Positions 1-40,634 of a stretch of 64,000 nucleotides of DNA are shown piece after piece. Within the stretch, counting starts at the first letter, position 1, and each line of letters starts with the position of its first letter. The translations under genes were made by a program, and so were the position numbers. The notes below the pieces were generated by a model that worked only from the letters and a program-made list of their open reading frames with translations, ran no database searches and had not been told where the DNA came from. The stretch is from Podarcis cretensis (lineage: Eukaryota), in assembly GCA_951804945.1 (NCBI GenBank), contig OX638149.1, positions 118,358,001 to 118,422,000 on the forward strand. Direction: 5' to 3'.

Positions 1-250
1 AGTGTACAGCTTCCGGGTCATGTGGCCAGCATGACTAAGCCACTTCTGGCGAACCAGAGCAGCGCACAGAAACGCCATTTACCTTCCCGCCAGAGTGGTA
101 CCTACTTATCTACTTGTACTTTGACGTGCTAGGTTAGCAGGAGCTGGGACCGAGCAAGGGGAGCTCACCCCCTCACAGGTATTCGAACCACCGACCTTCT
201 GAGTGGCAAGTCCTAGGCTCTGTGGTTTAACCCACAGCCACCCGCGTCCC
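1..250 (-). mobile_element. Sauria (POM-type) SINE, 3' end outside the window
   Basis: Reverse complement of the 3541 element; tRNA-like head GGGACGCGGGTGG...GGTTCGAAT. Confidence 0.9.
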
Positions 251-260
251 AGCCAAGAGA

Positions 261-414
261 TTAGTAGGTGCATATTAGAAGGCGCGTTGGTTTCTCCCTG
301 GCTCCTCCTGGCCGTGCTTTCTGGCTGAATCCCATCTGGCCCCGGACGCGAGCGGGAGGAGGAGGAGGGGCTGCTGTCGAGTGAAAAGTGCACACACGGA
401 GTGATTGATGAACT
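261..414 (-). pseudogene. Putative HoxD2 exon-1 relic (frameshifted, premature stop)
   Basis: Minus strand AGT TCA TCA ATC (SSSI), then after a 1-nt frameshift HSTAAPPPPPARVRGQMGFSQKARPGGAREKPTR... ending in TAA at 263-261. This is colinear with HOXA2 exon 1 as recalled ([44 protein letters not shown]). Position 3' of HOXD3 and strand match a paralog-group-2 locus. Confidence 0.7.
402..409 (+). promoter_or_regulatory. Pbx/Hox bipartite site TGATTGAT inside the Hox2 relic
   Basis: Perfect TGATTGAT(G) consensus coinciding with the SSSI codons; HOXA2 exon 1 is known to contain a conserved Hox-Pbx response element. Confidence 0.6.
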
Positions 415-594
415 CTTCATAGAACTAAAAAAAAATTTTTTTTTAAATCCGCCCCGTCGGCCCTCCTGTCTCACCGCGACTGCCCTGCTCCCAGCAGTAA
501 GGAAGAACACGCAGCCTTCCTTCCTTCCCCACTGGAAAACGCGGCTTCCCTTGGTGAATAACCAAGGAAGAGATTTGTTGCTTGTTGGCGATCA

Positions 595-725
595 ACTTAC
601 CATTCAGTCTCTCTCCTGATGAAAGTAGCTGAGGCCCCCAAAGTAGCGGAGACCTGGCTGAGCTCTCGCGCCTTTCCAGAGGCGGCGCTGGGTTAATGAT
701 TGAGCGCAGTGCCTGCCACGTGGTC
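595..725 (-). promoter_or_regulatory. Hox-type promoter module with splice donor upstream of the Hox2 relic
   Basis: E-box CACGTG 717-722, TCAATCATTAACC homeodomain/Pbx-like motif about 691-703, CpG-rich context, consensus donor ATG|GTAAGT at 601/600. Confidence 0.5.
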
Positions 726-1225
726 GCACAAAGAGGCTCCGCCAACTCGTCTCGGGCCACGCAGTGAAGCGAGAGTGGAAAGAGCGAATATCCCCCCCCC
801 CCAAACCCCGCACTCTTGCGCGCTATTGTTTGGTTTCAGGCTCCGGAGCTCTGGGATTGCGCGAGGAGGAGACTCTTTCCAAGAGTGCGCCTGGCCTGGT
901 GTTGTTGCTGGCAAACGTTTGCCATTCCAAGCCAGAACCTTCTTGATTTATTTATTTTTTAAACCATTGTGCTGTGTGTGGTTAGGGGGCGTTGTTTGGT
1001 TTTTGGAAGGAAGCTGGTTTCTGCGCCTTGGAAGGCAAAACGGAGCCTGGTGAAAGACGTCGGGGGCTTCCTTTTCTCAAGCTGCAATGTTTCTGACGGT
1101 GTGGTTTGGATGAGGCGACTGCAACTGCCACCCTAATCGTGGACTGTTGTATATAAGAAAAAGCAGCCTGAACCGGTTTATTGTGGCACAAACTTTGTGT
1201 GCCACAAAAAAATCTGCTTTCCAAG

Positions 1226-1418
1226 CACAGAAGCCAACTCGCAAGGGCCGAGGTCCCTTTGCCCCCCTAAAATATTTGAGGGGTTCTCCTCTCCCCAAAA
1301 GTTGATGGACACTGCCATTCAAATGCTGTGTGCGCCCCATGTCATGTGATACATTATGTGGGGCAGGGCTTACCTGAGGGACCCCCCCCCCAATATTTTA
1401 TTCAAGTTGGCACCGCTG
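1226..1418 (+). mobile_element. Non-autonomous hAT element, family A
   Basis: Ends CACAGAAGCCAAC...GTTGGCACCGCTG; 8-bp TSD tttccaag/cttccaag. Confidence 0.8.
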
Positions 1419-1789
1419 CTTCCAAGGGTCAGAAGGGTAGTTCTGCCACAACGCTCTAGCGTAGCGCTCTAGAAAAGAATTTTAGTTGTAGCAGGAAGCG
1501 CGGAAGACCAGTGAAGTAGCCTAACTCTGCACAAGGCCTTTATTTCTTCTCTGCACAGTACTGTAGCCTCTTCTCCTTCTGTCACACCACAGACCCGCAC
1601 GACAGGGTTTTAAATGAATGGATCTGGGATCCAGAGCTCTTTTGGTTCGTATAGCAAGCTGACTCTGTTTTGCATTAATTGTATTAATTTGCAAATAAAA
1701 TGTATAATTTGTATAACTGGGTTAAAAAATGGAAAATCAATAAAGAATAATTGGCAAAAAAGAGAGAGTTTTTCCTAGTCTACGTACCT

Positions 1790-1976
1790 CAGTGGTGTCC
1801 AAACTTTTTCACAGAGGGCCAGATTTGATGAAGTGAATGGCCGACCAAAGGGCCAACCAAAGTTGCTGAGGTTTTTTTTTAAGGATTTAACCCCAGGTAA
1901 TAAACTGCCATAGGGACCGGATTAAACCGACCAGCGGGCCGGATTAGGCCCCCGAAACGGACTTTGGACATGCCTG
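1790..1976. mobile_element. hAT MITE, family B
   Basis: TIRs CAGTGGTGTCCAAA / TTTGGACATGCCTG; TSD acgtacct/acgtagct. Confidence 0.8.
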
Positions 1977-2259
1977 ACGTAGCTGATCCGGATTGGGACC
2001 GGATGGGTGGATTTCCATCTCCTGACATTAAGTGATGTTGTGGTGCCCCTGATCAAAGGCATCTTGGCACCGATGGCTTTGCCCCACCCAAAGCACTAGA
2101 CAATGGTCCTCTCTGTGCTCATTAATCACCACCACTTCATGACCACAGGAGTCCAGGACAGAATCCCCACGTGACGAGGCCCCAATGATTGGCTGAAAGG
2201 GCGGATGAGGAGGTGATGGAATCCATCTATTTACCACCCTGATTGAGAGTACACCCGGG

Positions 2260-2434
2260 CAGAGGTGCCAACTTGAATAAAATATGGGGGAGAGGGCAGG
2301 TAAGCCCTGCCCCGCATCATCGATCACAAGATGCTCGGGCCCTATTTGAATGTCCATCAACTTTGGGGGGGCCACCCTCAAATATTTATTGGGGGGCCCG
2401 AAGGTACCTCAGCCCCTAGGAGTTGGTTCGTATG
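2260..2434 (-). mobile_element. Non-autonomous hAT element, family A (inverted copy)
   Basis: CAGAGGTGCCAAC...GTTGGTTCGTATG; 8-bp TSD cacccggg/cacctggg. Confidence 0.8.
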
Positions 2435-3540
2435 CACCTGGGTGCGCACCGTGCACATGATTTAGTATACGCGCGAAGGCTGGAGCAGCGCGTAATCGTG
2501 GTCTTGCGCTGTAGAGTTTGGGAGTGGGGTGGGTGGGTTCGGTTTCCACGTTCTGCAGAATGGAACGCTGAAATCTAACAGCCAAGTTTTGTCCTGGACT
2601 ACACCACACCGGGGAGGAGGCATTCTTCAAGCATGCATTCAGAAGAGTGCGGGAATAAAATAAAACAGACCCCATCTGCAACCTGAAGTAGTGCAGCCTA
2701 GGAAAAGTTTTACCTCTGCGCGGAAAATGGAAACAAATAAAATGCCTCGCATTCCTCATTACCGAAGAAGCCCCGCTTAGAAAAAAATCATTCACTTGGA
2801 GGATTTAAATACGCGCGCGCGCAATTAGACTCTTTCCTCCCCCCGCTCCGCCTACGTAAATAACTTTATAGGAAGGGTTACAAGTATTTACACATCCAGC
2901 CCTTTCAGCTTTGACTGAAGCTCTTTGGCACAGCCCAAATGAATGCAGTTCAAAGAGTCCTTGGCAAAGGCAGCCTTCCTTCCAAGAAGCTAAAAAAAAC
3001 AACAACTACTGTGCTAACTGACTTGGCATTTATTTTCTCTTGTTATTTTCTCCCCATTTGCTCGAATGTGCCGTGCCCTTCCCTCCTGCAACCTCCTAGC
3101 CCCTGCCAAAAATCCCCAGCGGTCCAGCTTAGCTCCACAGACTTTCCAGGACAGAAAAGAATAGAAGGCAGCTGGCAAGCTAGAGACCCTGCACACAGCA
3201 GAGAGACGGGCGAGGGCAAAGGGGGCTGGGCTGGGGGTTAGCACTGGAAGTCTGGACTAGGCGGTTGAGGTTGACTCCGACCTGAACACAGGCCCCTGTC
3301 AGTGCCACCAGTGGGACTTAACTTCCAAGGAACGTGCTCAGGATGGGTGATATCAGTTCCCCGTCCCCACCATTTCGAAACACACTTCTGGGTGGGAACT
3401 AGTCAGGGGGAAGCACTTTGGCACCTATATCCTATGCCTGAGTGGGCGTCAAGTAACTTCGACACAGAGCAGACCCACTGAAATAAATTTACTCAGGTTA
3501 GCCATGTGCATTTTTTTCCATGGACCTAACATTGGATACA

Positions 3541-3901
3541 GGGACGCGGGTGGCGCTGTGGGTTAAACCACAGAGCCTAGGACTTGCCGATCAGAAGGTC
3601 GGAGGTTCGAATCCCGCCACAGGGTGAGCTCCTGTTGCTCTGTCCCTGCTCCTGTCCACCTAGCAGTTCGAAAGCATGTCAAAGTGCAAGTAGATAAATA
3701 GGTATCTCTCCGGCGGGAAGGTAAAGGGCGTTTCCGTGCGCTGCTCTGGTTCGCCAGAAGCGGCTTAGTCATGCTGGCCCCATGACCCGGAAAAACTGTC
3801 TGTGGACAAACGCCGGCTTCCTCGGCCAATAAAGCGAGATGAGCCCCGCAACCCCAGAGTCGGTCAGGACTGGACCTAATGGTCGGGGGTCCCTTTATCT
3901 T
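3541..3901 (+). mobile_element. Full-length Sauria (POM-type) SINE with 14-bp TSD
   Basis: A/B boxes (TGGCGCTGTGG, GGTTCGAATCC), CCTTTA-type tail, and perfect TSD TAACATTGGATACA at 3527-3540 and 3902-3915. Confidence 0.93.
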
Positions 3902-4323
3902 TAACATTGGATACAACCTCCTGAGTTCAAGTGAGCCGCTTTCTCTATAGCTCACCATGTCGTGACGTTTGGGTTGGTCCTAACAGACGCAAAGATTTTG
4001 GAATTATTGTCAAGCAAAAGGCTGCTGCTTTTACGTGTTGGTTGTTGAACTCAATTGAATTCTAAATCTCTTGGGGTGGGTCGTTTTCAATCACTCTGCT
4101 CAGCCCCATTGCCTTTGGTGGAACTCTCCCACGAGAGGTATGTGACGATTGGGTGCCAAACCACCAAGGCTTCGATGCTAAGTACTGTACGCTTACTTGG
4201 CAATAGGTCATATGATAAGGGACTCCGGTGGGACTGCTTCTGAGTAACTAGGCGTAAGATCAGGTTGTAGCAGCCAGAATGCTACAATGCTGAACGGAAC
4301 TGAAAACCACCCTGCGCTTATAT

Positions 4324-4476
4324 CCTGTGGCTCAATGGGGTAGTGCGTCTGGCTGCTAACCAGAAGGTTAGCGGTTCGAGTCCACCTAGTTATGGCTGTG
4401 GGCAGGATTCGTCCTATTGTACAAGGAATTGAACTAGATGAACCTCAGGGTTCCATTCAACTCTATGACTCTATGT
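4324..4476 (+). mobile_element. tRNA-head, CR1-tail SINE (Squam3-like)
   Basis: GTGGCTCAATGG...GGTTCGAGTCC head and CTAGATGA...CAACTCTATGACTCTATG tail. Confidence 0.7.
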
Positions 4477-4552
4477 TTCCCTGTCCCAAGCAAACTGAGT
4501 ACTCTCCGATCCTATTTCTGACCTTTACTTTTGTGTTTAAGGTAGGATGTTA

Positions 4553-4794
4553 CATTGGTACCTCGGGTTACATACGCTTCAGCTTACATACGCTTCAGGT
4601 TACACACTCCGCTAACCCAGAAATAGTGCTTCAGGTTAAGAACTTTGCTTCAGGGTGAGAACAGAAATCGTGCTCCGGCGGTGCGGCGGCAGCAGGAGGC
4701 CCCCTTAGCTAAAGTGGTGCTTCAGGTTAAGAACAGTTTCAGGTTAAGAACGGACCTCCGGAACGAATTAAGTACTTAACCCGAGGTAGCACTG
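4553..4794 (+). mobile_element. Tc1/mariner-superfamily (Tigger-like) MITE
   Basis: TA-flanked TIRs CATTGGTACCTCGGGTTA / TAACCCGAGGTAGCACTG; internal TTCAGGTTA repeats. Confidence 0.85.
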
Positions 4795-5654
4795 TACTTG
4801 GGTTCCACCAATTCTAGTGAAGCATCCTTCTACATAATTGCGGTGTGTGTTTTTTTAAAAAAATAAAAATATGGGTGTCTCCTACCCGCATGTAGTGCAC
4901 ATGTGTCTACGTCCTAATGCCTCAAAATAAGTGCTATTTTGAGAAGGGAATTTAATGAATATAGATGTTTCTACTGATTAAAGGACCACGGAGGGGCATT
5001 CATTACTGGGGACGTTGTCTTAAACGTGAATTGGGGGTGATATATGTCACTTGTATTTTGAATCAATAGAAACGTTATAATTTGTTTCCTTGCCTGTTTA
5101 TTTTTATTGCCGGGGCAGCATCAAGAGATTTATTAGAAAGCTGAGAACTACCCTCACAGCACTTGCACGTGGAAAAAAATTCCAGAAAGGAGTCCACATT
5201 TAATCTGCAGATGGACCAGTGGTCATTTGCATGCAACTAATTATTATTCCCAGTGCTAATCAAGACAGCGTTTAGAAATAATATTACTGGTGTAAACACC
5301 CTTGTGAACCCTTTACAGAAAACCGATTTTAGCTGCAAATAATGAATTTGGTTCGGTAATGTAAAGTATGAAGACTCCTGTCAAAACCCCATTATATGCC
5401 ACTAATTTTTTCCCAAAGTTGCCTGGCTGCGAACTAGCGAACTTCGAACTAGCCCTGAGTCCAGTGAGTGATATTCCGATCCAGGCCAACTTTGCTTTGA
5501 AGTATATCCCCTAGATTTTAGTAAAACTGACTTGCAGGTTTTGGATCGCGATGTCAATCATCTTAAACGACACGGCGATACTTCAGTTTATCTCCGCGGT
5601 GGATCGGAGCGGGTTTTAAAAGGCTCATTTCTCAAGCCGCCTTTCTTTCCAAGA

Positions 5655-5800
5655 GGTCGGCCACGTGACTAGCTGAATAAATTCTGGAAAAGCTGAGGAG
5701 ACGCTGCAGAGTCTATTTAAGCAGAGCTATTTTACAAATGGGAGCAAATAAAGCCGCACATTCGGTTACCATTGCAATTGATGTGAAATTTCAGAAAGGC
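5655..5800 (+). promoter_or_regulatory. Conserved-looking element or possible antisense promoter 3' of HOXD3
   Basis: GGCCACGTGAC (5662-5667) followed by TATTTAA (5714-5720) on the plus strand in a CpG-enriched patch. Confidence 0.4.
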
Positions 5801-8800
5801 TTATATACACCTTCGTTCGTAAACGGATGGCGTGATCTGCGTCTCGATCATTCATCCTTCCTAACTGAACACGCTGCCACTTACTCCCTGAGTAAACATG
5901 CATAAGATTGCGCTGCAATTTATTTATTATGCTAGAAATCGAAGAAATATCCAGCTATCTTCCTGCGCAGCCCCGACCCCTATATCTGTTTATCCTGCTA
6001 TGTTCACATTTACTTGGGAGTAAGCCCCAGTGAAAACAGGGGGCTTGCTTCTGACTAAACATGTACAGTATAGGATAGGAGAGCCTCGAATTACCTGAAA
6101 CCAAAGGGGGAAGAGGGCTTAAATTTGACTGGATTGCACCCAGTAATAGAATCCCTGCTTTAAGGGATTTTAACGTCCTCATTCACACCCACCCGCTCCA
6201 AAAGACATTGGGAAGAAGAAGCATTCTAAAGGCAGGATCCTCTCCAGCACTCCTCCTCCTCCTGGGTTTCATGCTAGTTAGGTGCTACTCAAGCCGAATC
6301 GGCGGATCCTGTGTATTTGACAAGGAAGGAAGCCTAGCGGAGTCCAATAGGACTTCATCCTAAGGAAGCGTTCGCCGGAGTGCAGCCTTCCATGAATCAG
6401 AAAGGAGTACTAATCAGCCTTGGCAAGTATCTGAAATGCTTTGTAGAACCCAAACCTAGGCATGTACACTCAGAATTAAGACCTACTGGGTTCAGGAAGC
6501 CTTACTCTAGAGTAAGTACACAAAGGCAGGAAATACACGGTCTATGCATGTATACTCACTGGGTTCAATGCGGCTTACTGCTAGAACAGTGTGAACAGGA
6601 CAATGCACGCTTAGACTCAGGAGTAAGCAAGTATATAGGACTGGAGCCTAAGGCTCTCTTCTGGTCGCGTCTTGGCTACTTCAGCCCTGTAGTGCGCACT
6701 ATCTTCTGGAGGGCAAAGAGAAGGGAGAGCTGCCTTATGTGTGTTTTAAGTTCTTTTCACCGGCGGCTCCTTTCTTTTATTTTTATATTTTAAAGATCCT
6801 CCATACCACAAAGGGAGGCCTCCTAGTCTAACGTCTAAATGCTACGCCGCAAATAAACCGTGCGCGCTTTTGTGCCTTGCAAGCGGACCTTCTAAACCGA
6901 AGAGGCGCCTCTTTGCTTTGTTCCTTGGCGACCTCTGCATTATTATTCCTGTGCAAAAATGGCTACCAGGCCCCTTTGTTTGCACACAGCTCTGTTACAG
7001 TTGGAGAGGGAGAGAGGGAGGGGAGGGGGAAGGAGCCAACGAGAGAAGGCAGGCAGGCAGGCAGGCGGGCAGCCTCTATGCAGCGGGTAGGCTGCTGTAG
7101 CATCCACGTCGCCTTGCAAATACCTTCAGCAAAGCGTATCCCCCACTGACCCCGTCGAGTGGTGTCCTATCCGACGGACGTTGCTTAGCTACAGGGTTTA
7201 CTCCAAGCCAATGAGGAAGGAGACCCGGGAAAGATGCAGCGCCTCGTTTCTTTACCTAAGTGTGGGAGTATCAAAGCCCGTCAAAGCACAGGAGGAAGAC
7301 CAGGGAACGGGCTGAAGGCCCCTCTCCTCCCATTCGGAGGGGCTGATACCTGCGAATAAAAATGGGGAGCTAAATCTAGTCTAAATGTTTGCTCCTCGCT
7401 CTGCCTTCCTCCCCTGCTTAGAACAGCCGGAGCCCTGGAATCGCCTCCGAATCGACGGGCAGGAGGCTACTACGGATCCGTGTTGGCTGCTCCTTGGGTG
7501 TCAAAACATTAGGTTCAGTCCCATGCCCGCTTCTTTCCCGGGAGTAAGTACCACGAAATGGTACTCAAGGAGGGTGGGGGTGGATGCCCTTCTGAAGGGA
7601 ATGAAGAGGAAAACAAATGGTGACTTATGTGACTTGGTGACTTATGGGGCCGATGCTAAGCAAGTTCACTTAGAAGTCAACCCAGCTGACTTCACCCAAT
7701 ATTACTTTCCAGAAGGGTCTCTTAGGATTGCACCCCTAAAGAGAGAACTGGGGTTGTGGGGGGCATGTGCCTCTGATTCTCAGGCTCTCTCGCGCACACA
7801 TTCACACCCACGCGGATCTTCCCTTGTCGCCCTAGCTTCTTTCTGCCCACATGCAATACCACAATAAGCCACAATCGAGTTTACCACTTTGGGTTGCAGT
7901 GTGTAAGTCTGAATTAAAAGCGAAGGCGTGCTACGCAATAAAATTAAGGGCAAAAGAGGAAGACTATTTCAAAATTTAGACTTTGTTTCCCCTTAAGAAG
8001 GGAGAAGGGAGTTTGTTAGGGTAGCCTCGTTCCTATTTTTCTTTCTTTTCACCTTAACCATTGAAAAAATGGGAGGGGGATAATGTTGGCGTCCTCCAAA
8101 AGCACATTTTTGGCTTTGGCCAGGAATCTGGCGCAGCTAAAATGAAGATGAGTTACATTTAAAGGCAAGTCCCCGCAACCTTCCTCCTGATGTTCTTGAA
8201 AAGACATGGGCTTAGATGCTCCTGGGGAGAAGGACTGTTGACTCTTTGTAAAAGGGGTGCGGGGGGGGGGGGGAGAGAAATATTATTGGACCCGCTTACA
8301 GCACATTGTATTTGATTCAGATAACACCCCAGCAATTCAGGAAGCTAAACGGAGCAAGATTTATGTTAGGTGTGGAAACGGGTTGTATATCATTTATGAC
8401 GATCCGAAATGGGCGCGAAAGCCAAAGGGATGTTGTGCCAGAAACGTCTTTGAGCTTAAAGCAGAGCCATTAAAATCCGTGGGAGAGTTGCCATTGACTT
8501 CTATGAAGAGTCCCTCCTCTCCTCCATCTCTCTCTCTCGCTCGCTCTCGGGCACGGATCCCACAGCTGTTTACTTGGAAGTAAGCGCCAATTTAATCAAT
8601 GGGGCTTTCTGGCCAAGTAATTTGCTTAGCCTCGACGTGTTCCTCCGGGGCTGGCCTCCTGAGTCGGGGGGGGGGGCAGAAATAGAGCCAAGGGGAGACG
8701 TCGCTGCCCAGTACACTAATTGGGTTACGCTTTAAAGGGAGGCCTATGCCAATTCTAACAATATACTCCTACACAAGCCCTGAAATGTATGATTTCGAGA

Positions 8801-9568
8801 CTCACTTATGAAGGCTATAATGTATATATGTATAGCACAGTCTCTTCAAATCCCCATTGAGAGGGTGCCAATTGAGTGCTATGAATATTTTGAGAAAGGC
8901 TATCCCAATTTTTCTACGTATGTACAGAACTGTGTGTGTGTGTTAGTATATAATCCCTCCCAGCGATGCTTATAAATTATAGTGTCCCCTTTACTCGACT
9001 TTAAGAGGGAATAATAATGCAAGCCAGCCAAGGCACCATTTGAAGTCGAGCCCATAAAACATTAAGCTGTGGATAACACGTTGGGCCTCCCAGTCCCGCA
9101 GACTCAGCGGATGCCTTCTGAGTGACACACTAGACCATAAAGGGCCCACAGGGTTCGACTCTTTGTGCAATGTTTTGATTTATAGTAGTATGTGAAATAT
9201 GCCCTCACATGAAGAACATAAAAATAAAATCTACATGCACTATTTATTTATCAATTCAGTTGCCGGGAATTCCCTGGAAGACATATTAGAAAATCATTTT
9301 GTTGTGGTTGTAGCAGCTCACCAGTTGTGCGTATTATTAGTTATTGTATTCTGATTATTTTTTTTTAATGCTGGAAGAAACAGAAACTGCCATAGAAAGC
9401 CACTTTAGATCTGGAAGTGGTTAAAATATTTCTTCATTTGAAGCTGTTTATTCTGTTTTGTTTACAGATCTACAACACTTGGGTAAAAGTGAGATTTAAC
9501 AAAATGATACATTTCCCCCTCTTCTCTCAGTTAACAACATGGTATTTTAAAAAAAAGATAACGAGGTG

Positions 9569-9611
<43 letters not shown>

Positions 9612-10196
9612 TATACATATGTTATACTATATATATACATATCCATCCTCGTTGTCTAGACAGACACAAATGTAGGAGTAAAAACCTCTCACACACAAAA
9701 AGAATTGCAGTAGTTGCCATCATAGGACGTGGAGAGATGGAGCTGCATTATTAGTCAAACTGAAAAGTGAGGTTTTGCTACTGTTCTGTGGGACTTCAAA
9801 AGATCTGAATCTTAACTGAGTGCTTTTTAAAGCGATAAGGGATGCTTCCTTCTGAATTAATGGGCATGTATCGCTTCTAACGTGTACCTAATGCCACTTT
9901 CATGTTGAGAAAAGCTTTATAAAACCCAGTAAGAGATTAAATGCAACATACAAATAAAGAGGAAGAGTGGGGCGGGGGAGGATGTTTGCGTTTCCTGTCC
10001 CTTCTAGGCTTGGGGCAGAAACATTAGTTTACACAGGGATTGTACCAATGTCTGCTACAGAAGACTATATTAAATATTGATAGACCTAATTTCCTATCTC
10101 GAAAGCCATTCTGAGCATTTCAGAAGGACTTCCTCTCCTAAACCCTACCGCAGTCTTTCCTTTGTAGATACTTGATTGTCAATATTTCATTCAAAG

Positions 10197-10253
10197 TTTC
10201 TTCTTCTTCTTCTTCTTCTTCTTCTTCTTCTTCTTCTTCTTCTTCTTCTTCTT
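10197..10253. repeat. (TTC)n microsatellite in the probable extended HOXD3 3'UTR
   Basis: About 19 consecutive units. Confidence 0.95.
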
Positions 10254-11527
10254 CCCTCCCCTCCCTGTTCAGCAAAAGTAAGTTCGCGTTTCCAGTGACT
10301 TGTACAAAATTGATTTATGGTTAGCATAAATATCATATCATATAAATAATAATAATAATAGTAACAAAAATAATAACTGAAACAACAGTTTTAGCCTGAA
10401 TTGCTAAGAAAATCCTAATTACATCAACAATATTATATTGCTCCTAAATGTAAGTCTGAAGGTGTTGCATATTTTAAACTTTAAAATGATAAACAAGCAA
10501 CCAGACGAAATGGTGTGTGCAACAGATAGGAAGGAACCAATTTATGTATGCAGAAGTTGGTCAAAGACCAAACAGTCAACTGGCCACTATATAGCAGAAT
10601 ATAACAATATATGAGATATAAGGTAGCTTTTAATGCTAAGTAAAACCATACCAAACAATCTGAAATAAATAAACATGTGATATATATAGATAGATATATA
10701 TTAAAATAAAAAATGTATCGGCTCTTTTGTGTAATGTTTCAGTTTTTGTATTAATCTATGACTTACAATTTGCTTAATCCTTACATAAACTACAAACACC
10801 AGCCACTGTTACAACTGTTCAAAACTACTCTTTCTATTTCAGACCAAATATACTAAATAGGTGAAAATGTATAGTCACCAAAGACCTGAATCAATCTTCC
10901 CAAGTTAAGGGGGAAAGGGGGTGTGAAGAAACTCTACAAATATCCACATAAATACATTGAAGACCAGGATTAAATAATCAATGATACAAAAAAAAAAAAA
11001 GGTTCCTCTTAAAATAATAAATACATCTTATTTAAGTCCAAAGCAATCTTTCACATTACTAGAGAAAAAAATCTTATAAATTATAACTCTCGAAATAAGT
11101 CTCCGTTTTGGTCCCAAATGTTGTAAACACCTCATCAGGACTCACTTTCCCCGAGTTCTAATGGATTTCTACAACTTACCTTCCAGTACATCGTTACCAA
11201 TTATTACTCCCTTGAGGGAATGTTTAGATTTATTTATTTTTGTTAAGGATATTGCACTGCCATGCTTTTAAACGGCTAAAACATTTAAGAGGACAACAAG
11301 GGATGGGGGATGGGGCGGAAATAATTTTCATGGACTCGGTCGCCAAAGAAAACAAGAAATAGGTAGCTTCTACCAGGGACACACAAAAAAACCCACTGTA
11401 ATACTCAAAGTAATACTGCAACATCAGGGGCAAAGTGAGGTAATTTAAACGCGAATGCATTTCAATCTCTCTCTCGCTTTCTCTTTCTCTCTCTCTCTTT
11501 CTTTCTTTCTGAATGCGTTCCAGTCTA

Positions 11528-12276
11528 CTACAGATGCGTCAGTTTGGGCGCCTCCTGAATCCTTCCCTGAGTTGTGTGGTGAGAAGTGAGATCTGTGTAC
11601 GTGGGATGGGGGTCACAAGGTCCATGGTGATGGTTGCCTGGGATCTGAGCAGCGCAGCTGTAGTCCACGCTGGCAGATGAAGGATGGGAGAGGTGGCCGA
11701 TGTTGAACATGGGGCCAGAGGCTGGCATGGAATCAACGAAGTTCCCTCCGACATAGACGGGGCTGCCCTGCAAATTGGGGTTGGCGAAGCCGCCGTTGCT
11801 TTGCATGGCGTGATGGTCGTACTCGGCGCCTGGGTATCTCTTCTGTTGGGGCAAGCAGCTGCTGAGAGGCGCCGTGTAAGCCGCCAGCCCGTACATGTTT
11901 TGCTGCGATTTGGCAAAGGACGTCGGCGACGGGGCGTCGTAGCTCAAGCTGTTGACGGTGGGCAGCTGGCTGGAGTATCCTACATGGTTGGGCCCGCTCA
12001 AAGGCGGGCTCCGGTCTGGGGACTGCCCTACCGGGGAGTGCATAATTCCTTTCGCTTTTTGGTCTTTTTTGTACTTCATCCTCCGGTTCTGGAACCAGAT
12101 TTTGATCTGGCGCTCCGTCAGGTTCAGCAGGTTGGCCATCTCCACCCGGCGAGGGCGGCACAGATAGCGGTTGAAATGGAACTCCTTCTCCAGCTCCACT
12201 AGCTGCGCGCTGGTATAGGCGGTGCGCACCCGCTTGGAAGCGGGGCCCGGGGGGCTTTTGTCCTCGCAGTTCTCTC
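11528..12276 (-). CDS. HOXD3: Homeobox protein Hox-D3, coding exon 2 (homeodomain and C-terminus); spliced protein 438 aa
   Basis: Acceptor TTTTTGGACAG|GA at 12277/12276 restores frame ([44 protein letters not shown]). The PG3 homeodomain is followed by a D3-type tail ending QEAPKLTHL*. Confidence 0.98.
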
Positions 12277-14654
12277 CTGTCCAAAAAGGAGAGAAAGAAG
12301 AAAGAGAGGAGGTTGGCTGGCTGGCTGGCTAATTTACAAAGCCTGAGAGTATTAACATTGCCGCGGCCGGGGGAGGGAGGGACGGGAAATGCTTTGGCAC
12401 TCTGGGGCAGCAGAGGACTAGGTGCCAATTTTGCGGGGCGCGGAGCGAAAGAGGCGCACAAATCGCTATTATCACGCAGTTCCCACACTGCGGGAGACCT
12501 GCCCGAATTGGTATTATCCTCTATTTGTGGAACATCTTTAGCTGTTCACGATCTTCTTTTTCCTGAAGGTCCCTCTCCTCCTGAAATTTTAACCCACCCA
12601 CACTTTCCCCATAGTATTAAATCTGGACATTCAAAGCGAACTGAAACAGGACGGGGAAAGGACCGGGATATGTCCTCCCCGTGCACAATTGCCATTAATT
12701 AGCGAGGGTCGCTGCCTCATATCCGCACGGGAGAGGCGTGATTTAGGGACAGGGTGATCCAAACGACACTTCCCTCAAATCCTTCGATTTCATTGGATTT
12801 TATTTTATTTTCTTGAGACGGGCGGTGCTACAGTCGAGGTTTTCAGCTGCGGACAACACTCCCTCCCTCCGTCGCACAGTGTCTACAATGAGAATGGGGT
12901 TCGATCTCCCAACTCCGGGGTTCTCAGAGGGTTAGGAAAGTTACAGTTCCAGATGAGAGAGCTGTAAATCATCTAACTTAATTGGAAGAATCGATCGATC
13001 CCTGACAGAGCCCAGGAAGGTTCTCTTGGCTGGTCCCAAACAGGAGCAGGCCCCGGCCTCCCAAACTTGGAAGACAATGGAGCCGCCGCCGCCGCCTCTG
13101 GTACAGCTAACAAGAGGAAATCAGGCGCGTTCATTAGCTCCGAGGCGGTGCTCTAACTAGCAAGACAGCAGAAGTGGGGGATTCCCATAGGAAGAGCGCC
13201 GGGCGCGCGGGGTGGGGGAGAATCCGGGTTTACAACTCTCCAGGCTCCCTTTCCCCAGGAAAGTTGGCAGCAGCCATTTCAAGACAGGGGAGAAGGTCGC
13301 AGTGGTTGGATCTGCGACCACGTCAGCGTGTCTGCATAATAAACACATGTTTTGTTAGACTGCGTGTTTGCATTTTGTACACACCTTTGACACTGCTCGG
13401 GTTTAGACAGTCTGTAAACTTTCTGCATGCCAAATAAGGGGAGGAATGCTTGGGTCTCCACCTTGTCACCACCAAGATGGTTTCAGAGGACAGAGTCGCC
13501 AAATGCAGGCCACACACGCTTGGGGACAGAAGGTCTCAGAAGGTGATGGACCGCTACTGTTTATTTGTGATGGGGGAGTTATAACTGATTTGATACTTTT
13601 ATTGCTTTATTGTGCTTATTGTAAATCGCTCTGTCGTTTTTTTAGAATGAAGAGCGGTCTAAACACTAAGTAAGTAAGTACAGTAAGTAAGCAAGCAAGC
13701 AAGCAAGTAAGGGACAGAGGGAGGGAGGGACAGAGGGAGGGTGGTCGGTCCACTCTGGATCTGGAGAAGAGACCGGCCTGCTAGAATAAAGATGGGGATT
13801 TATTGGTTCATTGTTTCTTGGAATCTGATGTAAAGCACCATGGATAAGTTGCAAAATGGTGGGAATTGTGGGAAGAAGGAAGCTCTATGGTCTGTGGATG
13901 ACTGCAATGTGCCAGAGGAAAGCTGGACACTTGGAATGCAAATTGGTGATATTGTATGTTGTATCGATTTTCATTTTTTATTGTGTTGGGTTATTTGCAT
14001 TTTGTACACTTTTTGGATATTTCTTATGTTTAGCAATTTTTAAAGTTCTTAAACAAATGGCACTTTCAATAAAGAAGACACCTCTTAAAATAAGACTTCT
14101 AGCAATGCGTTTTGCAGTGGGGATCCTTGCGAGCCTAAACTTTGAAATGACAAAAGAGCGGGAGTTTGTCACATTCCATTCCCCGCCCTTGCACTTTTAT
14201 TTAATTTTTTGTCTTCCTACCCCAGACTAAAATCCTTACTGAAAACCAATTCCCATCTATTTAAATGAGACTTTACCCCTTAAATGCACTTGGGTAACTA
14301 ACCTCTTTGAGAAGGGGCAAGGGAAGGGCAATATTAAAGGAGGAAATCTTTCGGCTGGTGCAATTTCTATATGAAATCATCAATGTAGGCTTTGAAGTCG
14401 CACAGAATTCGCCCTCTGGCTGAACGTTCAAATGACAGCTGGAGGGGGGAGGAAATAAATGTTGCCAAGACAAGTCATTCCATTTGCATGGCTCTCCCAA
14501 AGACCAGCAAGATGTCTTCAACTTACTTGTATCTTGCAGGGCTGGGGGAGTCAGATAAACGTCACAGCCTGGTCTCTGATGTTCTAGATGGATCTCCTCC
14601 CTTCAATATTGGGGGGGTGGGGAGTTAAAAAGGGGGACTGGGTACACCCATATT

Positions 14655-14995
14655 AATGACTACTAGCCATGAAGGTTCTGCACCACCTCCAAGTTCAGGA
14701 ACAGTTTGCCAATTATTGGGTAAGATGGCAAAAGAAGGCTCTTGCTGCTCTGTGCTGCTTGGAGGCTTCCCATTGTCATTGGTTAGACACTGCAGGATGC
14801 AGCATGCTGGACTAGATGGGCCTTTGGTGTGCTGGTGGAGGGGAAGGGGATTAGATTCATAGACCCATAGAGTTGGAAGGCACCCTGACAATCATCTAGG
14901 CCAGGGTTTCCTAAACTTGGGTCTCCAGCTGTTGTTGGACTACAACTGCCATCATCCCTAACTAGCAAGACCAGGGATGACCAGTGGTCAGTGAA
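14655..14995. mobile_element. TE cluster in the HOXD3 intron: CR1-type 3' end, inverted CR1-type tail, half of a family-C MITE
   Basis: ATGCTGGACTAGATGGGCC (CR1-like end), CATAGAGTTGGAAGG, and CAGGGTTTCCTAAACTTGGGTCTCCAGC...GGACTACAAC. Confidence 0.65.
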
Positions 14996-15260
14996 GATCC
15001 CTGCAATGCAGGAATATAAAGCTGTCCGATATACGGATTGAACTTGTAAGCTTGGCATTATCAGCACCATGATCACACCAACTGAACTATCCAGGCTTGG
15101 CTTTTGTTGTTACTGTTTTCAGGGGGTTTTTTAAAATGTATTTTGTGCTTTTACGTTGTTGTTTTTAGCTTGTGAACTGCCCTGAGCTCTGCAGGTGACC
15201 AGCTGGGTCCATCCAACCCAAACCCAGACCACTGGGGTGGATCCACTTCATAGCATTGTC

Positions 15261-15452
15261 TATAGGAGCAAACTCCTAAGGGCCATAAAAACTCCATAAA
15301 ATATTTGAGGGGGCTACCTCCACAAGTTGATGGACATTGCCATTCAAATGGTGTGTGTGCGCACCGCATCTTGTGAATGATTATGCAGGGTGGGGCTTAC
15401 CTGGGTGTCTCCCCCCTCCCACCCCAATATTTTATTCAGGTTGGCCCCCCCC
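15261..15452 (+). mobile_element. Non-autonomous hAT element, family A, in the HOXD3 intron
   Basis: Shares AAAATATTTGAGGGG...GTTGATGGACATTGCCATTCAAATG...CAATATTTTATTCAGGTTGGC with the 1226 copy. Confidence 0.75.
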
Positions 15453-15504
15453 CCTTAAATTGCCTAAACCCTGATTGGCAGCGGCTCTGAACAGCACCAC
15501 TGAG

Positions 15505-15562
15505 CGAGGCACTCGGGAATCGAACCTGCGACCTTCTGCATGCAAAGCGGAGCTACAGCCCC
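15505..15562 (-). mobile_element. Degenerate tRNA-derived SINE head about 170 bp from the HOXD3 donor
   Basis: GGGGCTGTAGCTC...TGCATGCAGAAGGTCGCAGGTTCGATTCCC; a related head lies at about 53130-53255. Confidence 0.6.
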
Positions 15563-15730
15563 TCGCTTGGCAGGACTCCTCCTCCTGCTGCTGCTGCTGC
15601 TGCTGCTCTCTCTTTCCTGCCTCTTGCTCTCTGATTCGCGGTGTGCCTGGACTGGAGCAACCAAGGGAAACCCCCTTGAAGGGCACAGAGGGCCTTGCTG
15701 CTCCCCAGGAGGTGGAGCTCGACTGGGTAC

Positions 15731-16298
15731 CTGCGGGGGCGCAGCTGCTCTTCTGCTTGGAGTTCTGGCGGGACTCCTTCATCCACGGGAAGATCTGCTT
15801 GCTAATCGTGGCCGCCGAGCCGCCCGAGGCGTTGGCCCCGCCTTTGCCCTTTTTGGCGGGAACCGAGTGGGCGGGGTTGCTGCTGGGCGGCGAGGGCGAC
15901 GGCAGCGCGGGGGGCGGAGCCTGTTGCTGAGGCGGCGGTTGCTGCTGCTGCTGCTGCTGCTGCTGTTGCTCGGCTAGGCCCGGCGGCTGCTGAGGGCCTC
16001 CCTGGGCGCCTCCGGTGGGGCGCATGCAGCTACCGCTCAGCTCGGCGCTCTTGTGGGCCGGAGGCGCCCGGATGGCGGCGGCGGCGGCGGCTCCTTGGAG
16101 CGAGCAGGCCGAGCCTGCGTAGTCGGTGTCCAGGGCGGGCTGGGCGTAGGGCTGAGGAGGGCCCGGCGGGTAGCCGTAGGCGTCCGCTTTGCTGTAGCCG
16201 CCGTAGGCCCCGAAGAGGCCCGCGTTGTCGTAGTAGGCGGCCTTCTGCATGGTGGGCTCCGCCGTCGCCAAGGCCTCGGCAGCCCGCTCAAATAACAT
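15731..16298 (-). CDS. HOXD3: Homeobox protein Hox-D3, coding exon 1 (568 nt, phase-1 donor)
   Basis: Translation MLFE...[14 protein letters not shown]...[21 protein letters not shown] matches the HOXD3 N-terminus and FPWM hexapeptide. Donor GCAG|GTACCC at 15731/15730. Upstream acceptor TCTCTCTTTTCCAG|G at 16377/16376, with an in-frame TGA before the ATG. Confidence 0.97.
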
Positions 16299-39336: not shown

Positions 39337-39647
39337 CTACAAAGTTGTCAAGTCTGTCTGATGCTCCTTGGAGACAGTCTGTGAGTGTTGGCTGGGGGCC
39401 GAGGAAGAGCTAGAGGACCGGCCCTTGGTGTTGGGCAGTTTGTGGTCTTTTTTCCACTTCATCCTCCTGTTCTGGAACCAGATCTTGATCTGGCGTTCGG
39501 AGAGACACAACGTGTGGGCGATTTCGATCCGCCGGCGCCGAGTCAGGTACCGGTTGAAATGGAATTCCTTCTCCAGCTCGAGGACTTGCTGCCTCGTGTA
39601 GGCTGTCCTGGAGCGCTTCGGTTCTCCTCCGGTGTAATTAGGATTCA
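39337..39647 (-). CDS. HOXD4: Homeobox protein Hox-D4, coding exon 2 (homeodomain); spliced protein 246 aa
   Basis: Acceptor CTCAG|TG at 39648/39647. [53 protein letters not shown]...[11 protein letters not shown]...TDLTTL* is diagnostic of D4. Confidence 0.98.
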
Positions 39648-39849
39648 CTGAGCGGGGAGAGACAAACCACAGGCAGGGCTTAACAACCAACCCTCCAAAA
39701 CAACAACAACAACAACAGCAAACCCACAGCCTAATCTTGACTTTCTCATTAGGCGTTAAGGAAGAGAGAGAGAGAAAAGGGAGTCTCTGGTAACCATGTG
39801 GCCGTTATATACACCATTACATTTGCTAATAACAGATGGCCAAGCTTTC

Positions 39850-40068: not shown

Positions 40069-40204
40069 CTACCTCGATTTCAACCCGCGTCGCGAAGCCT
40101 GGAAAGGACTTTGGAGGGGTGGGGTGAGGTGGGGTAATGAATCAAGAAGGGGGAGGCGGAGTGGGGTGGGGTGGGCGAGGTGGGTAGCAGAAGGGGATGC
40201 TTAC

Positions 40205-40634
40205 CTGAGTTAACGTGGACTTTCTTCATCCAAGGGTAAACCACCGCTGGCTGCTTCATTGCTCCTGCTGCTGTTGGTGGCGATGACCCGTTGGGGCTTT
40301 TGAGGCTGGGCTGCTGGTTGCAGGTCCTCGTGGCGGGCATTGGAGGCGGGGGACAGTGCTCAGCCTGCCCGGGGAAGTGGCTCGCTGGGCCGGATTGCTC
40401 CTGCCCGTGACCCCGCGGCTGCACTGCCGAGCCCTGGGCATTGCTACAACCGTAGGGCTGCTCGCTGTAGTTTGACCGTGGATAGATTCCCTGGTGCTGG
40501 AAGTCAGAGCCTTGCGAGGCACCGTAATAGTCTGAGCTTTGCTCAGCAAGGTAGCTGTTCTGCAGATATTCCTCGCAAGGGGGGAATTTGGGGTCCACAT
40601 ACTTAGAGTTCACCATATACGAACTCATGGCCAT
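40205..40634 (-). CDS. HOXD4: Homeobox protein Hox-D4, coding exon 1 (430 nt)
   Basis: [23 protein letters not shown]...[17 protein letters not shown]; donor TCAG|GTAAGC at 40205/40204. Confidence 0.98.

What the first reader, a model, noticed from the sequence alone, without database searches (positions are those of the whole stretch)
261..414. Fossil of the lost HoxD2 gene: decayed Hox2 exon 1 downstream of HOXD3
Seen: the minus strand reads AGTTCATCAATC (SSSI), 19 nt, then CAC TCG ACA GCA GCC CCT CCT CCT (HSTAAPPP)...CAG ATG GGA TTC AGC CAG AAA (QMGFSQK)...RPGGAREKPTR, then TAA at 263-261. Established (recalled): HOXA2 exon 1 is [10 protein letters not shown](18 nt)[17 protein letters not shown]...[12 protein letters not shown], and HoxD2 persists in cartilaginous fishes but is regarded as lost in tetrapods. 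Four motif blocks occur in the same order, on the Hox strand, in the slot between D3 and D1. The MNxEFERE start is not recognisable, and there is a frameshift and a stop. Inference: an ancient HoxD2 pseudogene. I do not know of it being described in lizards but cannot check the literature.
Basis: partly seen in the sequence, partly recalled or inferred. Interest (0 to 1): 0.9.

Follow-up and report, generated by a model that had tools for sequence, protein, structure and literature searches.

The report
Possible HoxD2 exon scrap with Hox-Pbx site
About 11 kb downstream of HOXD3 in a lacertid lizard, a 58-base patch carries an exact copy of the Hox-Pbx binding site known from inside the first exon of Hoxa2; it may be the last trace of the lost HoxD2 gene, but the match is too short to separate from coincidence with the data I could reach.

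Summary
The block lies 11.1 kb 3' of the HOXD3 stop codon in a lacertid HoxD cluster.

Only two of the four claimed motif blocks carry any signal:
- **SSSI codons (414-403).** They sit in a 13-nt stretch (414-402) identical to mouse Hoxa2 exon 1. That stretch contains the published Hox-Pbx response element TGATTGATGA, which occurs once in the 64 kb window.
- **HSTAAPPP (383-360).** It follows at Hoxa2-like spacing: 34 nt from SSSI to PPP, against 33 nt in HoxA2.

The rest is not supported:
- The two tail blocks (QMGFSQK, RPGGAREKPTR) and the upstream region score no better than shuffles.
- In a related species the tail has 7 substitutions and a 2-nt insertion.
- Standard tBLASTn with HoxA2 and HoxB2 proteins finds nothing at the block.
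- Frameshift-aware alignment gives a per-locus p of 0.014-0.07, which does not survive scanning the interval.
- With the alignment fixed to start at SSSI, 0.5-1% of random genomic start points do as well.

This is not a recognisable pseudogene exon. It is at most a 58-nt vestige.

My odds are about 45% a true HoxD2 exon-1 remnant kept as a Hox-Pbx element, 35% coincidence, and 20% an unrelated Hox-Pbx site. I could obtain neither shark or bichir HoxD2 sequence nor the same interval from other vertebrates.

The parts
402..414 (-). 13 nt (AGTTCATCAATCA) identical to mouse Hoxa2 exon 1. They code SSSI and contain the Hox-Pbx response element; on the + strand this is TGATTGATGA at 402-411.
   Evidence: the only copy in the 64 kb window. 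The EMSA oligo and the mutated decamer are printed in PMC2425489.
384..401 (-). Spacer between the SSSI codons and HST. Counting the last base of the 13-mer it is 19 nt, against 18 nt in HoxA2. It shows little similarity to Hoxa2 and causes the frame shift.
   Evidence: The Hoxa2 spacer was rebuilt from oligos in PMC2425489.
360..383 (-). CAC TCG ACA GCA GCC CCT CCT CCT = HSTAAPPP, matching HoxA2 HSTLIPPP. It runs on as a CCT/CCC tract to 354.
   Evidence: HoxA2 proteins of 31 species carry SSSI and HST in this N-terminal part, and the species printed read HSTLIPPP. The anchored test is and the gapped pattern.
261..356 (-). It shows no Hox2 similarity above chance and varies among related lizards.
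   Evidence: p 0.57-0.82; substitutions at 289, 295, 297, 305, 312, 314 and 317, plus a 2-nt insertion behind 324, in organism I.
427..444 (-). An A9T9 run directly upstream of the patch. Any upstream colinearity with Hox2 stops here.
   Evidence: notes that reads seem cut at 422-455.
1..246 (-). A tRNA-derived squamate SINE that abuts the tail. Whatever lay 3' of the block is interrupted here, and the window ends.
   Evidence: One search shows a B-box-like GGTTCGAATACC. One search shows inverted copies of 11-130 and 178-238 at 3673-3792 and 3555-3615, 92-93% complementary.
599..900 (-). A CpG-rich, promoter-like stretch ending in a splice-donor-like AATG|GTAAGT, with GT at 600-599. It lies where a HoxD2 promoter or 5'UTR would have been. 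Its function is not tested.
   Evidence: sequence only. The laid runs gave no RNA evidence.
11528..16298 (-). HOXD3 coding exons, used as the anchor for the position of the block. Exon 2 with the homeobox is at 11528-12274 and exon 1 ends at 16298.
   Evidence: The best hit is Podarcis lilfordi Hox-D3 at 97% identity.

Best explanation
The 58 nt at 357-414 (minus strand) are the only recognisable remnant of the first exon of HoxD2, the paralogue-group-2 gene that sharks and bichirs keep between HoxD3 and HoxD1. It no longer codes. It has no start codon, a 1-nt frame shift, no hexapeptide and a stop, and its tail drifts freely among lacertids.

What survives is the part that in Hoxa2 has two roles. 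The SSSI codons are also a Hox-Pbx response element (TGATTGATGA). A short adjacent stretch (HST..PPP) survives with it.

A neutral pseudogene could not stay recognisable over the roughly 400 million years since the loss. I therefore infer that the patch was kept because Hox-Pbx dimers bind it, so that it acts as a cross- or auto-regulatory input to the neighbouring genes (Hoxd1, Hoxd3).

What is shown is the sequence identity, the position, the strand and the spacing. The ancestry from HoxD2, the binding and the regulatory role are inferred.
For: - **Position and strand.** The patch lies 11.1 kb 3' of the HOXD3 stop on the Hox strand.
- **Nucleotide identity.** It is 13/13 nt identical to the mouse Hoxa2 EMSA oligo that defines the exonic Hox-Pbx element. 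That oligo translates to FQSSSIKTS, so the element is the SSSI codons. The 13-mer and the decamer each occur once in the window.
- **Spacing.** HSTxxPPP follows with 34 nt from SSSI to PPP, against 33 nt in HoxA2. HoxB2 lacks the SHSTL insert and aligns worse, p 0.22 against 0.03.
- **Anchored test.** Only 0.5-1% of about 20,000 random genomic anchors show equal downstream similarity to HoxA2.
- **Gapped pattern.** The decamer plus N14-24 plus CACTCGACA was found in 0 of 100 shuffles.
- **Copy number.** The patch is single copy, not a repeat.
- **Precedent.** HoxD2 persists in sharks and bichir (PMC3707753, PMC5054437). A psi-hoxd2 fragment is known in the teleost Pantodon (PMC4166920).
Against: - **Size of the signal.** It is about 22-31 identical nucleotides in three patches.
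- **Standard search.** tBLASTn with HoxA2 and HoxB2 gives no hit at E<=50.
- **Unanchored alignment.** Frameshift-aware alignment puts the locus only in the top 3-8% of the window. At least 15 of 1064 bins have higher composition-corrected z-scores, and the per-locus p is 0.014-0.07.
- **Nucleotide alignment.** A Smith-Waterman alignment of the 47 printed Hoxa2 nucleotides is matched or beaten in 29 of 100 simulated windows.
- **Flanks.** The N-terminal part and the tail are at chance level.
- **Low complexity.** PPP comes from a low-complexity CCT tract.
- **Constraint.** None is shown. In a relative about 3% diverged, 327-506 has 4 differences and 1 gap in 180 nt, no fewer than the flanks. 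The tail has 7 substitutions and an indel.
- **Cofactor site.** No Meis/Prep TGACAG site lies within 1 kb.
- **Missing comparisons.** No HoxD2 sequence and no other vertebrate's D3-D1 interval could be compared.
- **Literature.** No such relic is reported in the papers I could search.
Confidence: 0.45

Rival explanations
1. It is coincidence. A Hox-Pbx-like decamer arose by chance in GC-rich intergenic DNA next to a CCT-rich low-complexity tract, and a reader who knows HOXA2 by heart saw an exon in it. On this reading there is no ancestry from Hox2 and no function.
For: - Generic TGATNNATKR sites occur 16 times in the window, with 10.7 expected.
- The exact decamer appears at least once in 20 of 100 shuffled windows.
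- The 47-nt Hoxa2 alignment score is reached in 29 of 100 simulated windows.
- The whole-exon protein alignment is not exceptional.
- Two of the four claimed blocks and the N-terminus are at chance level.
- The tail is hypervariable.
- A neutral relic more than 400 million years old should not be recognisable at all.
Against: - The match falls in the one interval and on the one strand where HoxD2 is expected, about 11 kb of 128 kb searched.
- It hits the one functionally defined element of the exon.
- It uses identical codons for SSSI. By my arithmetic that is 1 of 648 ways to encode it.
- It is followed by HST..PPP at HoxA2 spacing (anchored p 0.005-0.01; 0 of 100 shuffles).
- My rough joint estimate for chance is 0.001-0.005 after allowing for the search of the interval. 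This is inference, not a tool result.
Confidence: 0.35
2. It is a working Hox-Pbx site of independent origin. It belongs to an intergenic enhancer or promoter-proximal region of the HoxD cluster, for example for Hoxd1, Hoxd3 or a non-coding transcript starting in the CpG-rich stretch at 600-900. On this reading it never was part of a HoxD2 exon, and the HST..PPP resemblance is accidental.
For: - TGATTGAT is the canonical Pbx-Hox core (my own knowledge of the site), so function alone could explain 8-10 of the 13 identical bases.
- Hox clusters are known to hold auto- and cross-regulatory Hox-Pbx sites (PMC2425489).
- A CpG-rich, promoter-like stretch with a donor-like GTAAGT lies 200-500 nt upstream.
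Against: - Identity extends 3 nt beyond the decamer, in the same orientation as in Hoxa2.
- The downstream HST..PPP at the right spacing remains unexplained.
- No Meis/Prep site lies within 1 kb.
- No evidence of constraint or of transcription was obtained.
Confidence: 0.2

Closest known systems
Exonic Hox-Pbx response element (HRE) in the 205-bp ultraconserved element of Hoxa2 exon 1 (Lampe et al. 2008, PMC2425489)
   Same: The decamer TGATTGATGA is identical, plus 3 more bases. It has the same orientation relative to the Hox genes and the same reading as SSSI codons. HST..PPP follows at nearly the same distance.
   Different: - The Hoxa2 element lies in a live coding exon that is 83% identical over 186 bp across vertebrates. 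Here only about 58 nt resemble it, with a divergent 19-nt spacer and a frame shift.
- Binding and activity are untested here.
- The intronic PH sites that the Hoxa2 element cooperates with cannot be looked for, because a SINE and the window end follow.
HoxD2 of cartilaginous fishes and bichir (PMC5054437, PMC3707753, PMC3509897)
   Same: The slot is the same, between HoxD3 and HoxD1, and the strand is the same.
   Different: Those are intact genes. I could not obtain their sequences, so orthology rests on position only.
Remnants of lost Hox genes: psi-hoxd2x in Pantodon (PMC4166920) and the HoxD12 remnant in the Banna caecilian (PMC4470032)
   Same: These are short, non-coding leftovers of a lost Hox gene found at the syntenic place.
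   Different: - Those were found by homeobox similarity or by global alignment, and probably stem from younger losses.
- This one would be far older.
- It has no homeobox part in view and is much shorter.
Paralogous conserved non-coding elements dating to the 2R duplications, such as the 32-nt HOTAIR CNE with a copy in HoxD (PMC7139118)
   Same: A very short element is shared between paralogous Hox clusters.
   Different: That element is documented across vertebrates. Cross-species conservation of this patch is not shown.

Membership tests
Hox paralogue group 2 gene, exon 1 (as a pseudogene) | Lies between Hox3 and Hox1 on the same strand | tested here: inconclusive
   It is 11.1 kb 3' of the HOXD3 stop on the Hox strand. 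HOXD1 lies outside the window and was not seen.
Hox paralogue group 2 gene, exon 1 (as a pseudogene) | N-terminal MN(Y/F)[23 protein letters not shown] motif | tested here: not met
   Aligning the 33 N-terminal residues to 415-640 gives p 0.23-0.40 against shuffles. The Hoxa2 ChIP forward primer finds no match with up to 3 mismatches.
Hox paralogue group 2 gene, exon 1 (as a pseudogene) | Core FQSSSIK..(SHST)LIPPPFEQ | tested here: inconclusive
   SSSI and HSTxxPPP are present at HoxA2 spacing, but with a frame shift. The anchored p is 0.005-0.01. The unanchored per-locus p is 0.014-0.07 and does not stand out in the window.
Hox paralogue group 2 gene, exon 1 (as a pseudogene) | Hexapeptide (Y/F)PWMKEKK at the end of exon 1 | tested here: not met
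   Aligning the tail, hexapeptide included, to 247-356 gives p 0.57-0.82. The SINE starts at about 246.
Hox paralogue group 2 gene, exon 1 (as a pseudogene) | Homeobox exon downstream | not testable with these tools
   It would lie beyond the start of the window. tBLASTn finds no extra homeobox in 1-11500.
Hox paralogue group 2 gene, exon 1 (as a pseudogene) | Significant alignment to Hox2 proteins by standard search | tested here: not met
   tBLASTn at E<=50 with coelacanth and wall-lizard HoxA2 and coelacanth HoxB2 hits only the HOXD3 and HOXD4 homeoboxes.
Hox paralogue group 2 gene, exon 1 (as a pseudogene) | Groups with HoxD2 rather than A2 or B2 | not testable with these tools
The spacing is A2-like rather than B2-like.
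Hox-Pbx response element | Decamer fitting TGATNNATKR, here the exact Hoxa2 HRE TGATTGATGA | tested here: met
   It lies at 402-411 (+) and is the only copy in the window. The sequence is as printed in PMC2425489.
Hox-Pbx response element | Bound by Hox-Pbx, with activity that depends on the site | not testable with these tools
   This needs EMSA, ChIP or a reporter assay.
Hox-Pbx response element | Nearby Meis/Prep site (TGACAG), as in many Hox-responsive enhancers | tested here: not met
   The nearest TGACAG is at 1579-1584. The site is not obligatory: Lampe et al. saw no trimeric complex on the Hoxa2 HRE.
Conserved non-coding element | Conserved above the neutral rate across species | tested here: inconclusive
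   Only close relatives could be laid.
- In organism I, 327-506 has 4 differences and 1 gap in 180 nt, against 25 in 888 nt for the flank.
- In organism J, 391-538 has 6 in 148 nt, against 7-10% for the flanks.
- The positions within the 58-nt core were not shown.
- The tail at 282-338 is clearly not conserved.

The most novel reading that the evidence does not exclude
A piece of HoxD2 exon 1 has survived in tetrapods for more than 400 million years after the gene died. It survived because its SSSI codons were also a Hox-Pbx response element, so an exon turned into an enhancer module that still feeds Hox input into the 3' end of the HoxD cluster. This would imply that the exonic HRE predates the 2R duplications.
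Probability: 0.4. Interest if true: 0.7.

Novelty: new member of a known kind. Interest (0 to 1): 0.4.

Why it matters
If real, this would be the first trace of HoxD2 in a tetrapod. It would also be a clean example of a coding exon outliving its gene as a regulatory site.

It would date the exonic Hox-Pbx element of Hox2 genes to before the cluster duplications. It would also point to a concrete, mutable 10-bp input into Hoxd1/Hoxd3 regulation.

If it is coincidence, the case shows how little a few recalled motifs prove. Two of the four blocks and the whole-exon alignment fail simple shuffle controls.

Tried and rejected
- **DNA of other vertebrates.** I therefore got no D3-D1 interval from other species and no Hox2 nucleotide sequences.
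- **HoxD2 proteins.** None were reached.
  - The HOXD3 exon-1 search returned Hox3 proteins only.
  - The homeodomain search of the representatives returned Hox3 proteins and fused gene models, from which I picked out Hox2 N-termini.
- **Family libraries.** Pfam on the three open frames gave nothing. Rfam on 1-12000 gave only a SINE-type tRNA hit and weak mir-297 noise.
- **Bacterial scan.** The bacterial promoter and terminator scan is irrelevant here.
- **One failed run and one flawed run.** A permissive tBLASTn run timed out. My first merge of the published oligos was wrong and was redone correctly.
- **Upstream colinearity.** I considered a 'TCGC..TGAG' resemblance at 470-478 to the AECLTS codons, with the A9T9 run as an insertion. 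I rejected it: the intervening bases match at random level and the ChIP primer gives no hit.
- **Retrocopy of HoxA2.** Rejected, because the similarity is far too low and patchy.
- **Part of a repeat.** Rejected. The depth is single copy and the SINE arms end at 238.
- **RNA evidence.** None was obtained. No listed holder is on record as RNA, and the one 'RNA?' run looks like low-coverage DNA.
- **Papers not held.** Ravi 2009, Amemiya 2010 and Santini 2003 were not available.

Full report
**Where we are.** The window is a lacertid HoxD cluster read on the minus strand.
- The ORF at 15432-16298 is HOXD3 exon 1. Its best hit is Podarcis lilfordi Hox-D3 at 97% identity.
- HOXD3 exon 2, with the homeobox, is at 11528-12274.
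- HOXD4 is at 39337-39690 and 40080-40634.
- The finding at 261-414 therefore lies on the Hox strand, 11.1 kb 3' of the HOXD3 stop. That is where HoxD2 lies in animals that have it.
- HOXD1 is beyond the window start.
- A tRNA-derived SINE fills 1-246. Its copy in reverse orientation is at 3555-3792.

**The observation.** All quoted strings are present.
- SSSI is at 414-403.
- A 19-nt spacer follows.
- HSTAAPPP is at 383-360, in another frame.
- QMGFSQK is at 338-318 and RPGGAREKPTR at 314-282.
- TAA is at 263-261.
- Pfam sees nothing in any frame.

- I searched the representative proteins with the HOXD3 homeodomain.
- Among the hits were fused Hox gene models that contain Hox2 N-termini.
- I used these to collect 120 HoxB2 clusters and 120 HoxA2 clusters. 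The HoxA2 set includes wall lizard, snakes, coelacanth, lungfish, reedfish, gar and sturgeon.
- HoxA2 reads ...[38 protein letters not shown]... almost invariantly. HoxB2 lacks the SHSTL insert.
- From SSSI to PPP the candidate has 34 nt, against 33 nt in HoxA2. The spacing is A2-like, not B2-like.

**The strongest point.** Lampe et al. 2008 (PMC2425489) showed that the first exon of Hoxa2 contains a Hox-Pbx response element, TGATTGATGA, inside a 205-bp ultraconserved element.
- Their EMSA top strand translates to FQSSSIKTS, so the element is the SSSI codons.
- The same decamer occurs once in the 64 kb window, at 402-411.
- Identity to the mouse oligo extends to 13 nt, at 414-402.
- The decamer followed after 14-24 nt by CACTCGACA (HST) is found once here and in 0 of 100 shuffles. 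Of those nine bases only CACTC is confirmed, from a printed Hoxa2 primer. The remaining GACA rests on the protein sequence.
I had reached it independently.

**Controls, which are sobering.**
- *Standard tBLASTn.* With full-length HoxA2 and HoxB2 at E<=50, only the HOXD3 and HOXD4 homeoboxes are hit. Nothing appears at the block, and no extra homeobox appears in 1-11500.
- *Frameshift-aware protein-to-DNA alignment over both strands.* With the 62-residue N-terminus, 13-49 of 640 bins score as well as the locus, depending on query and penalties. It is top only with a 22-residue query chosen after the fact.
- *Composition correction.* At least 15 of 1064 bins have a higher z-score. Per-locus shuffle p is 0.014-0.07 for the 62- or 88-residue query. 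About 50-90 such bins lie in the interval, so this is not significant.
- *Nucleotide level.* I rebuilt 47 nt of mouse Hoxa2 from the printed oligos. Its best local alignment here is the bare 13-mer, a score reached in 29 of 100 simulated windows.
- *Flanks.* The upstream 33 residues give p 0.23-0.40. The tail, hexapeptide included, gives p 0.57-0.82.
- *HoxB2.* It aligns worse than HoxA2, p 0.22 against 0.03.
- *Anchored at SSSI.* Downstream similarity to HoxA2 is matched by only 0.5-1% of about 20,000 random genomic anchors.

**Relatives.** The stretch 255-1654 was accepted by the reads tool. All four runs are contigs of related species.
- The block is single copy. 1195-1429 is a high-copy repeat.
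- Organism I is about 3% diverged (25 differences in 888 nt of flank). It has seven substitutions (289-317) and a 2-nt insertion behind 324, all inside blocks 3-4.
- The tail is therefore neither constrained nor kept in frame.
- Across 327-506 organism I shows 4 differences and 1 gap in 180 nt, but the positions were not listed. For the 58-nt core the data have no power.
- No RNA evidence was obtained.

**Weighing.**
- Protein similarity alone is at noise level.
- The case rests on a set of coincidences. The 13-nt match falls in the one interval and on the one strand expected. It hits the one functionally defined element of the exon with identical codons. It is followed by HST..PPP at HoxA2 spacing.
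- My rough joint estimate for chance, allowing for the search of the interval, is 0.001-0.005. This is inference.
- The prior for a recognisable relic of a gene lost more than 400 million years ago is also very low, unless the piece was exapted. Bichir still has HoxD2 and coelacanth does not. The dual-use SSSI/HRE stretch is the one part for which exaptation is plausible.
- I therefore put about 45% on a true HoxD2 exon-1 vestige kept as a Hox-Pbx element, about 35% on coincidence, and about 20% on an unrelated Hox-Pbx site.
- In none of these cases is it a 'decayed exon' with four motif blocks. At most 58 nt are meaningful.

**Literature.** The searchable library holds no report of a HoxD2 remnant in a tetrapod.
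- A psi-hoxd2x fragment is described in Pantodon.
- A HoxD12 remnant is described in a caecilian.
- Three key comparative papers were not held, so prior description elsewhere cannot be excluded.

**Limits.**
- There were no HoxD2 comparators and no cross-vertebrate alignment.
- Hox2 nucleotides were available only as 47 nt from published oligos. Short oligos copied from PMC2425489 were typed into.
- The 3' continuation is cut by a SINE and by the window edge.

Noticed in passing
window 599-900 (minus strand): A CpG-rich, promoter-like stretch holds an E-box (CACGTGG) and a TCAATCATTAA motif. It ends in AATG|GTAAGT, which looks like a first-exon splice donor on the Hox strand. It lies where a HoxD2 promoter would have been, or it may start a non-coding transcript.
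   Followed up: partly
window 1-246 and 3555-3792: Two copies of a tRNA-derived squamate SINE lie in opposite orientation, 92-93% complementary. The first abuts the finding and cuts off anything 3' of it.
   Followed up: partly
window 1195-1429: A very high-copy repeat. Summed contig depth reaches tens of thousands in three related species, with many internal deletion variants of about 100 nt (1283 to about 1386).
   Followed up: no
window 4319-4396 (+): A tRNA-Ser(GCT)-like sequence (Rfam tRNA 30.9 bits, ARAGORN). It lies in intergenic Hox DNA and is probably the head of another SINE rather than a tRNA gene.
   Followed up: no
window 2150-2230 (minus strand): A second motif cluster (CAGCCAATCATTGG followed by GTCACGTGG) resembles the TCAATCATTAA/CACGTGG pair at about 700-725. 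TGATTAATGA and TGATCGATGA lie nearby, at 2119-2128 and 2317-2326.
   Followed up: no
window 427-444: A perfect A9T9 run lies directly upstream of the patch. Contigs of relatives break here.
   Followed up: no
proteins P0128, P0130, P0138, P0126, P0129 (public databases): Several public gene models fuse neighbouring Hox genes into one protein, for example A3+A2+A1 in Aldrovandia, B2+B1 in a bird, and a duplicated B2 in Acipenser. They are useful as a back door to Hox2 sequences, but they are annotation errors.
   Followed up: partly
window 15900-15990 (HOXD3 exon 1): A run of ten glutamines followed by a proline-rich stretch in HOXD3 exon 1. It is not seen in the more distant Hox-D3 hits, whose identity falls to 57-77% outside lacertids.
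   Followed up: no
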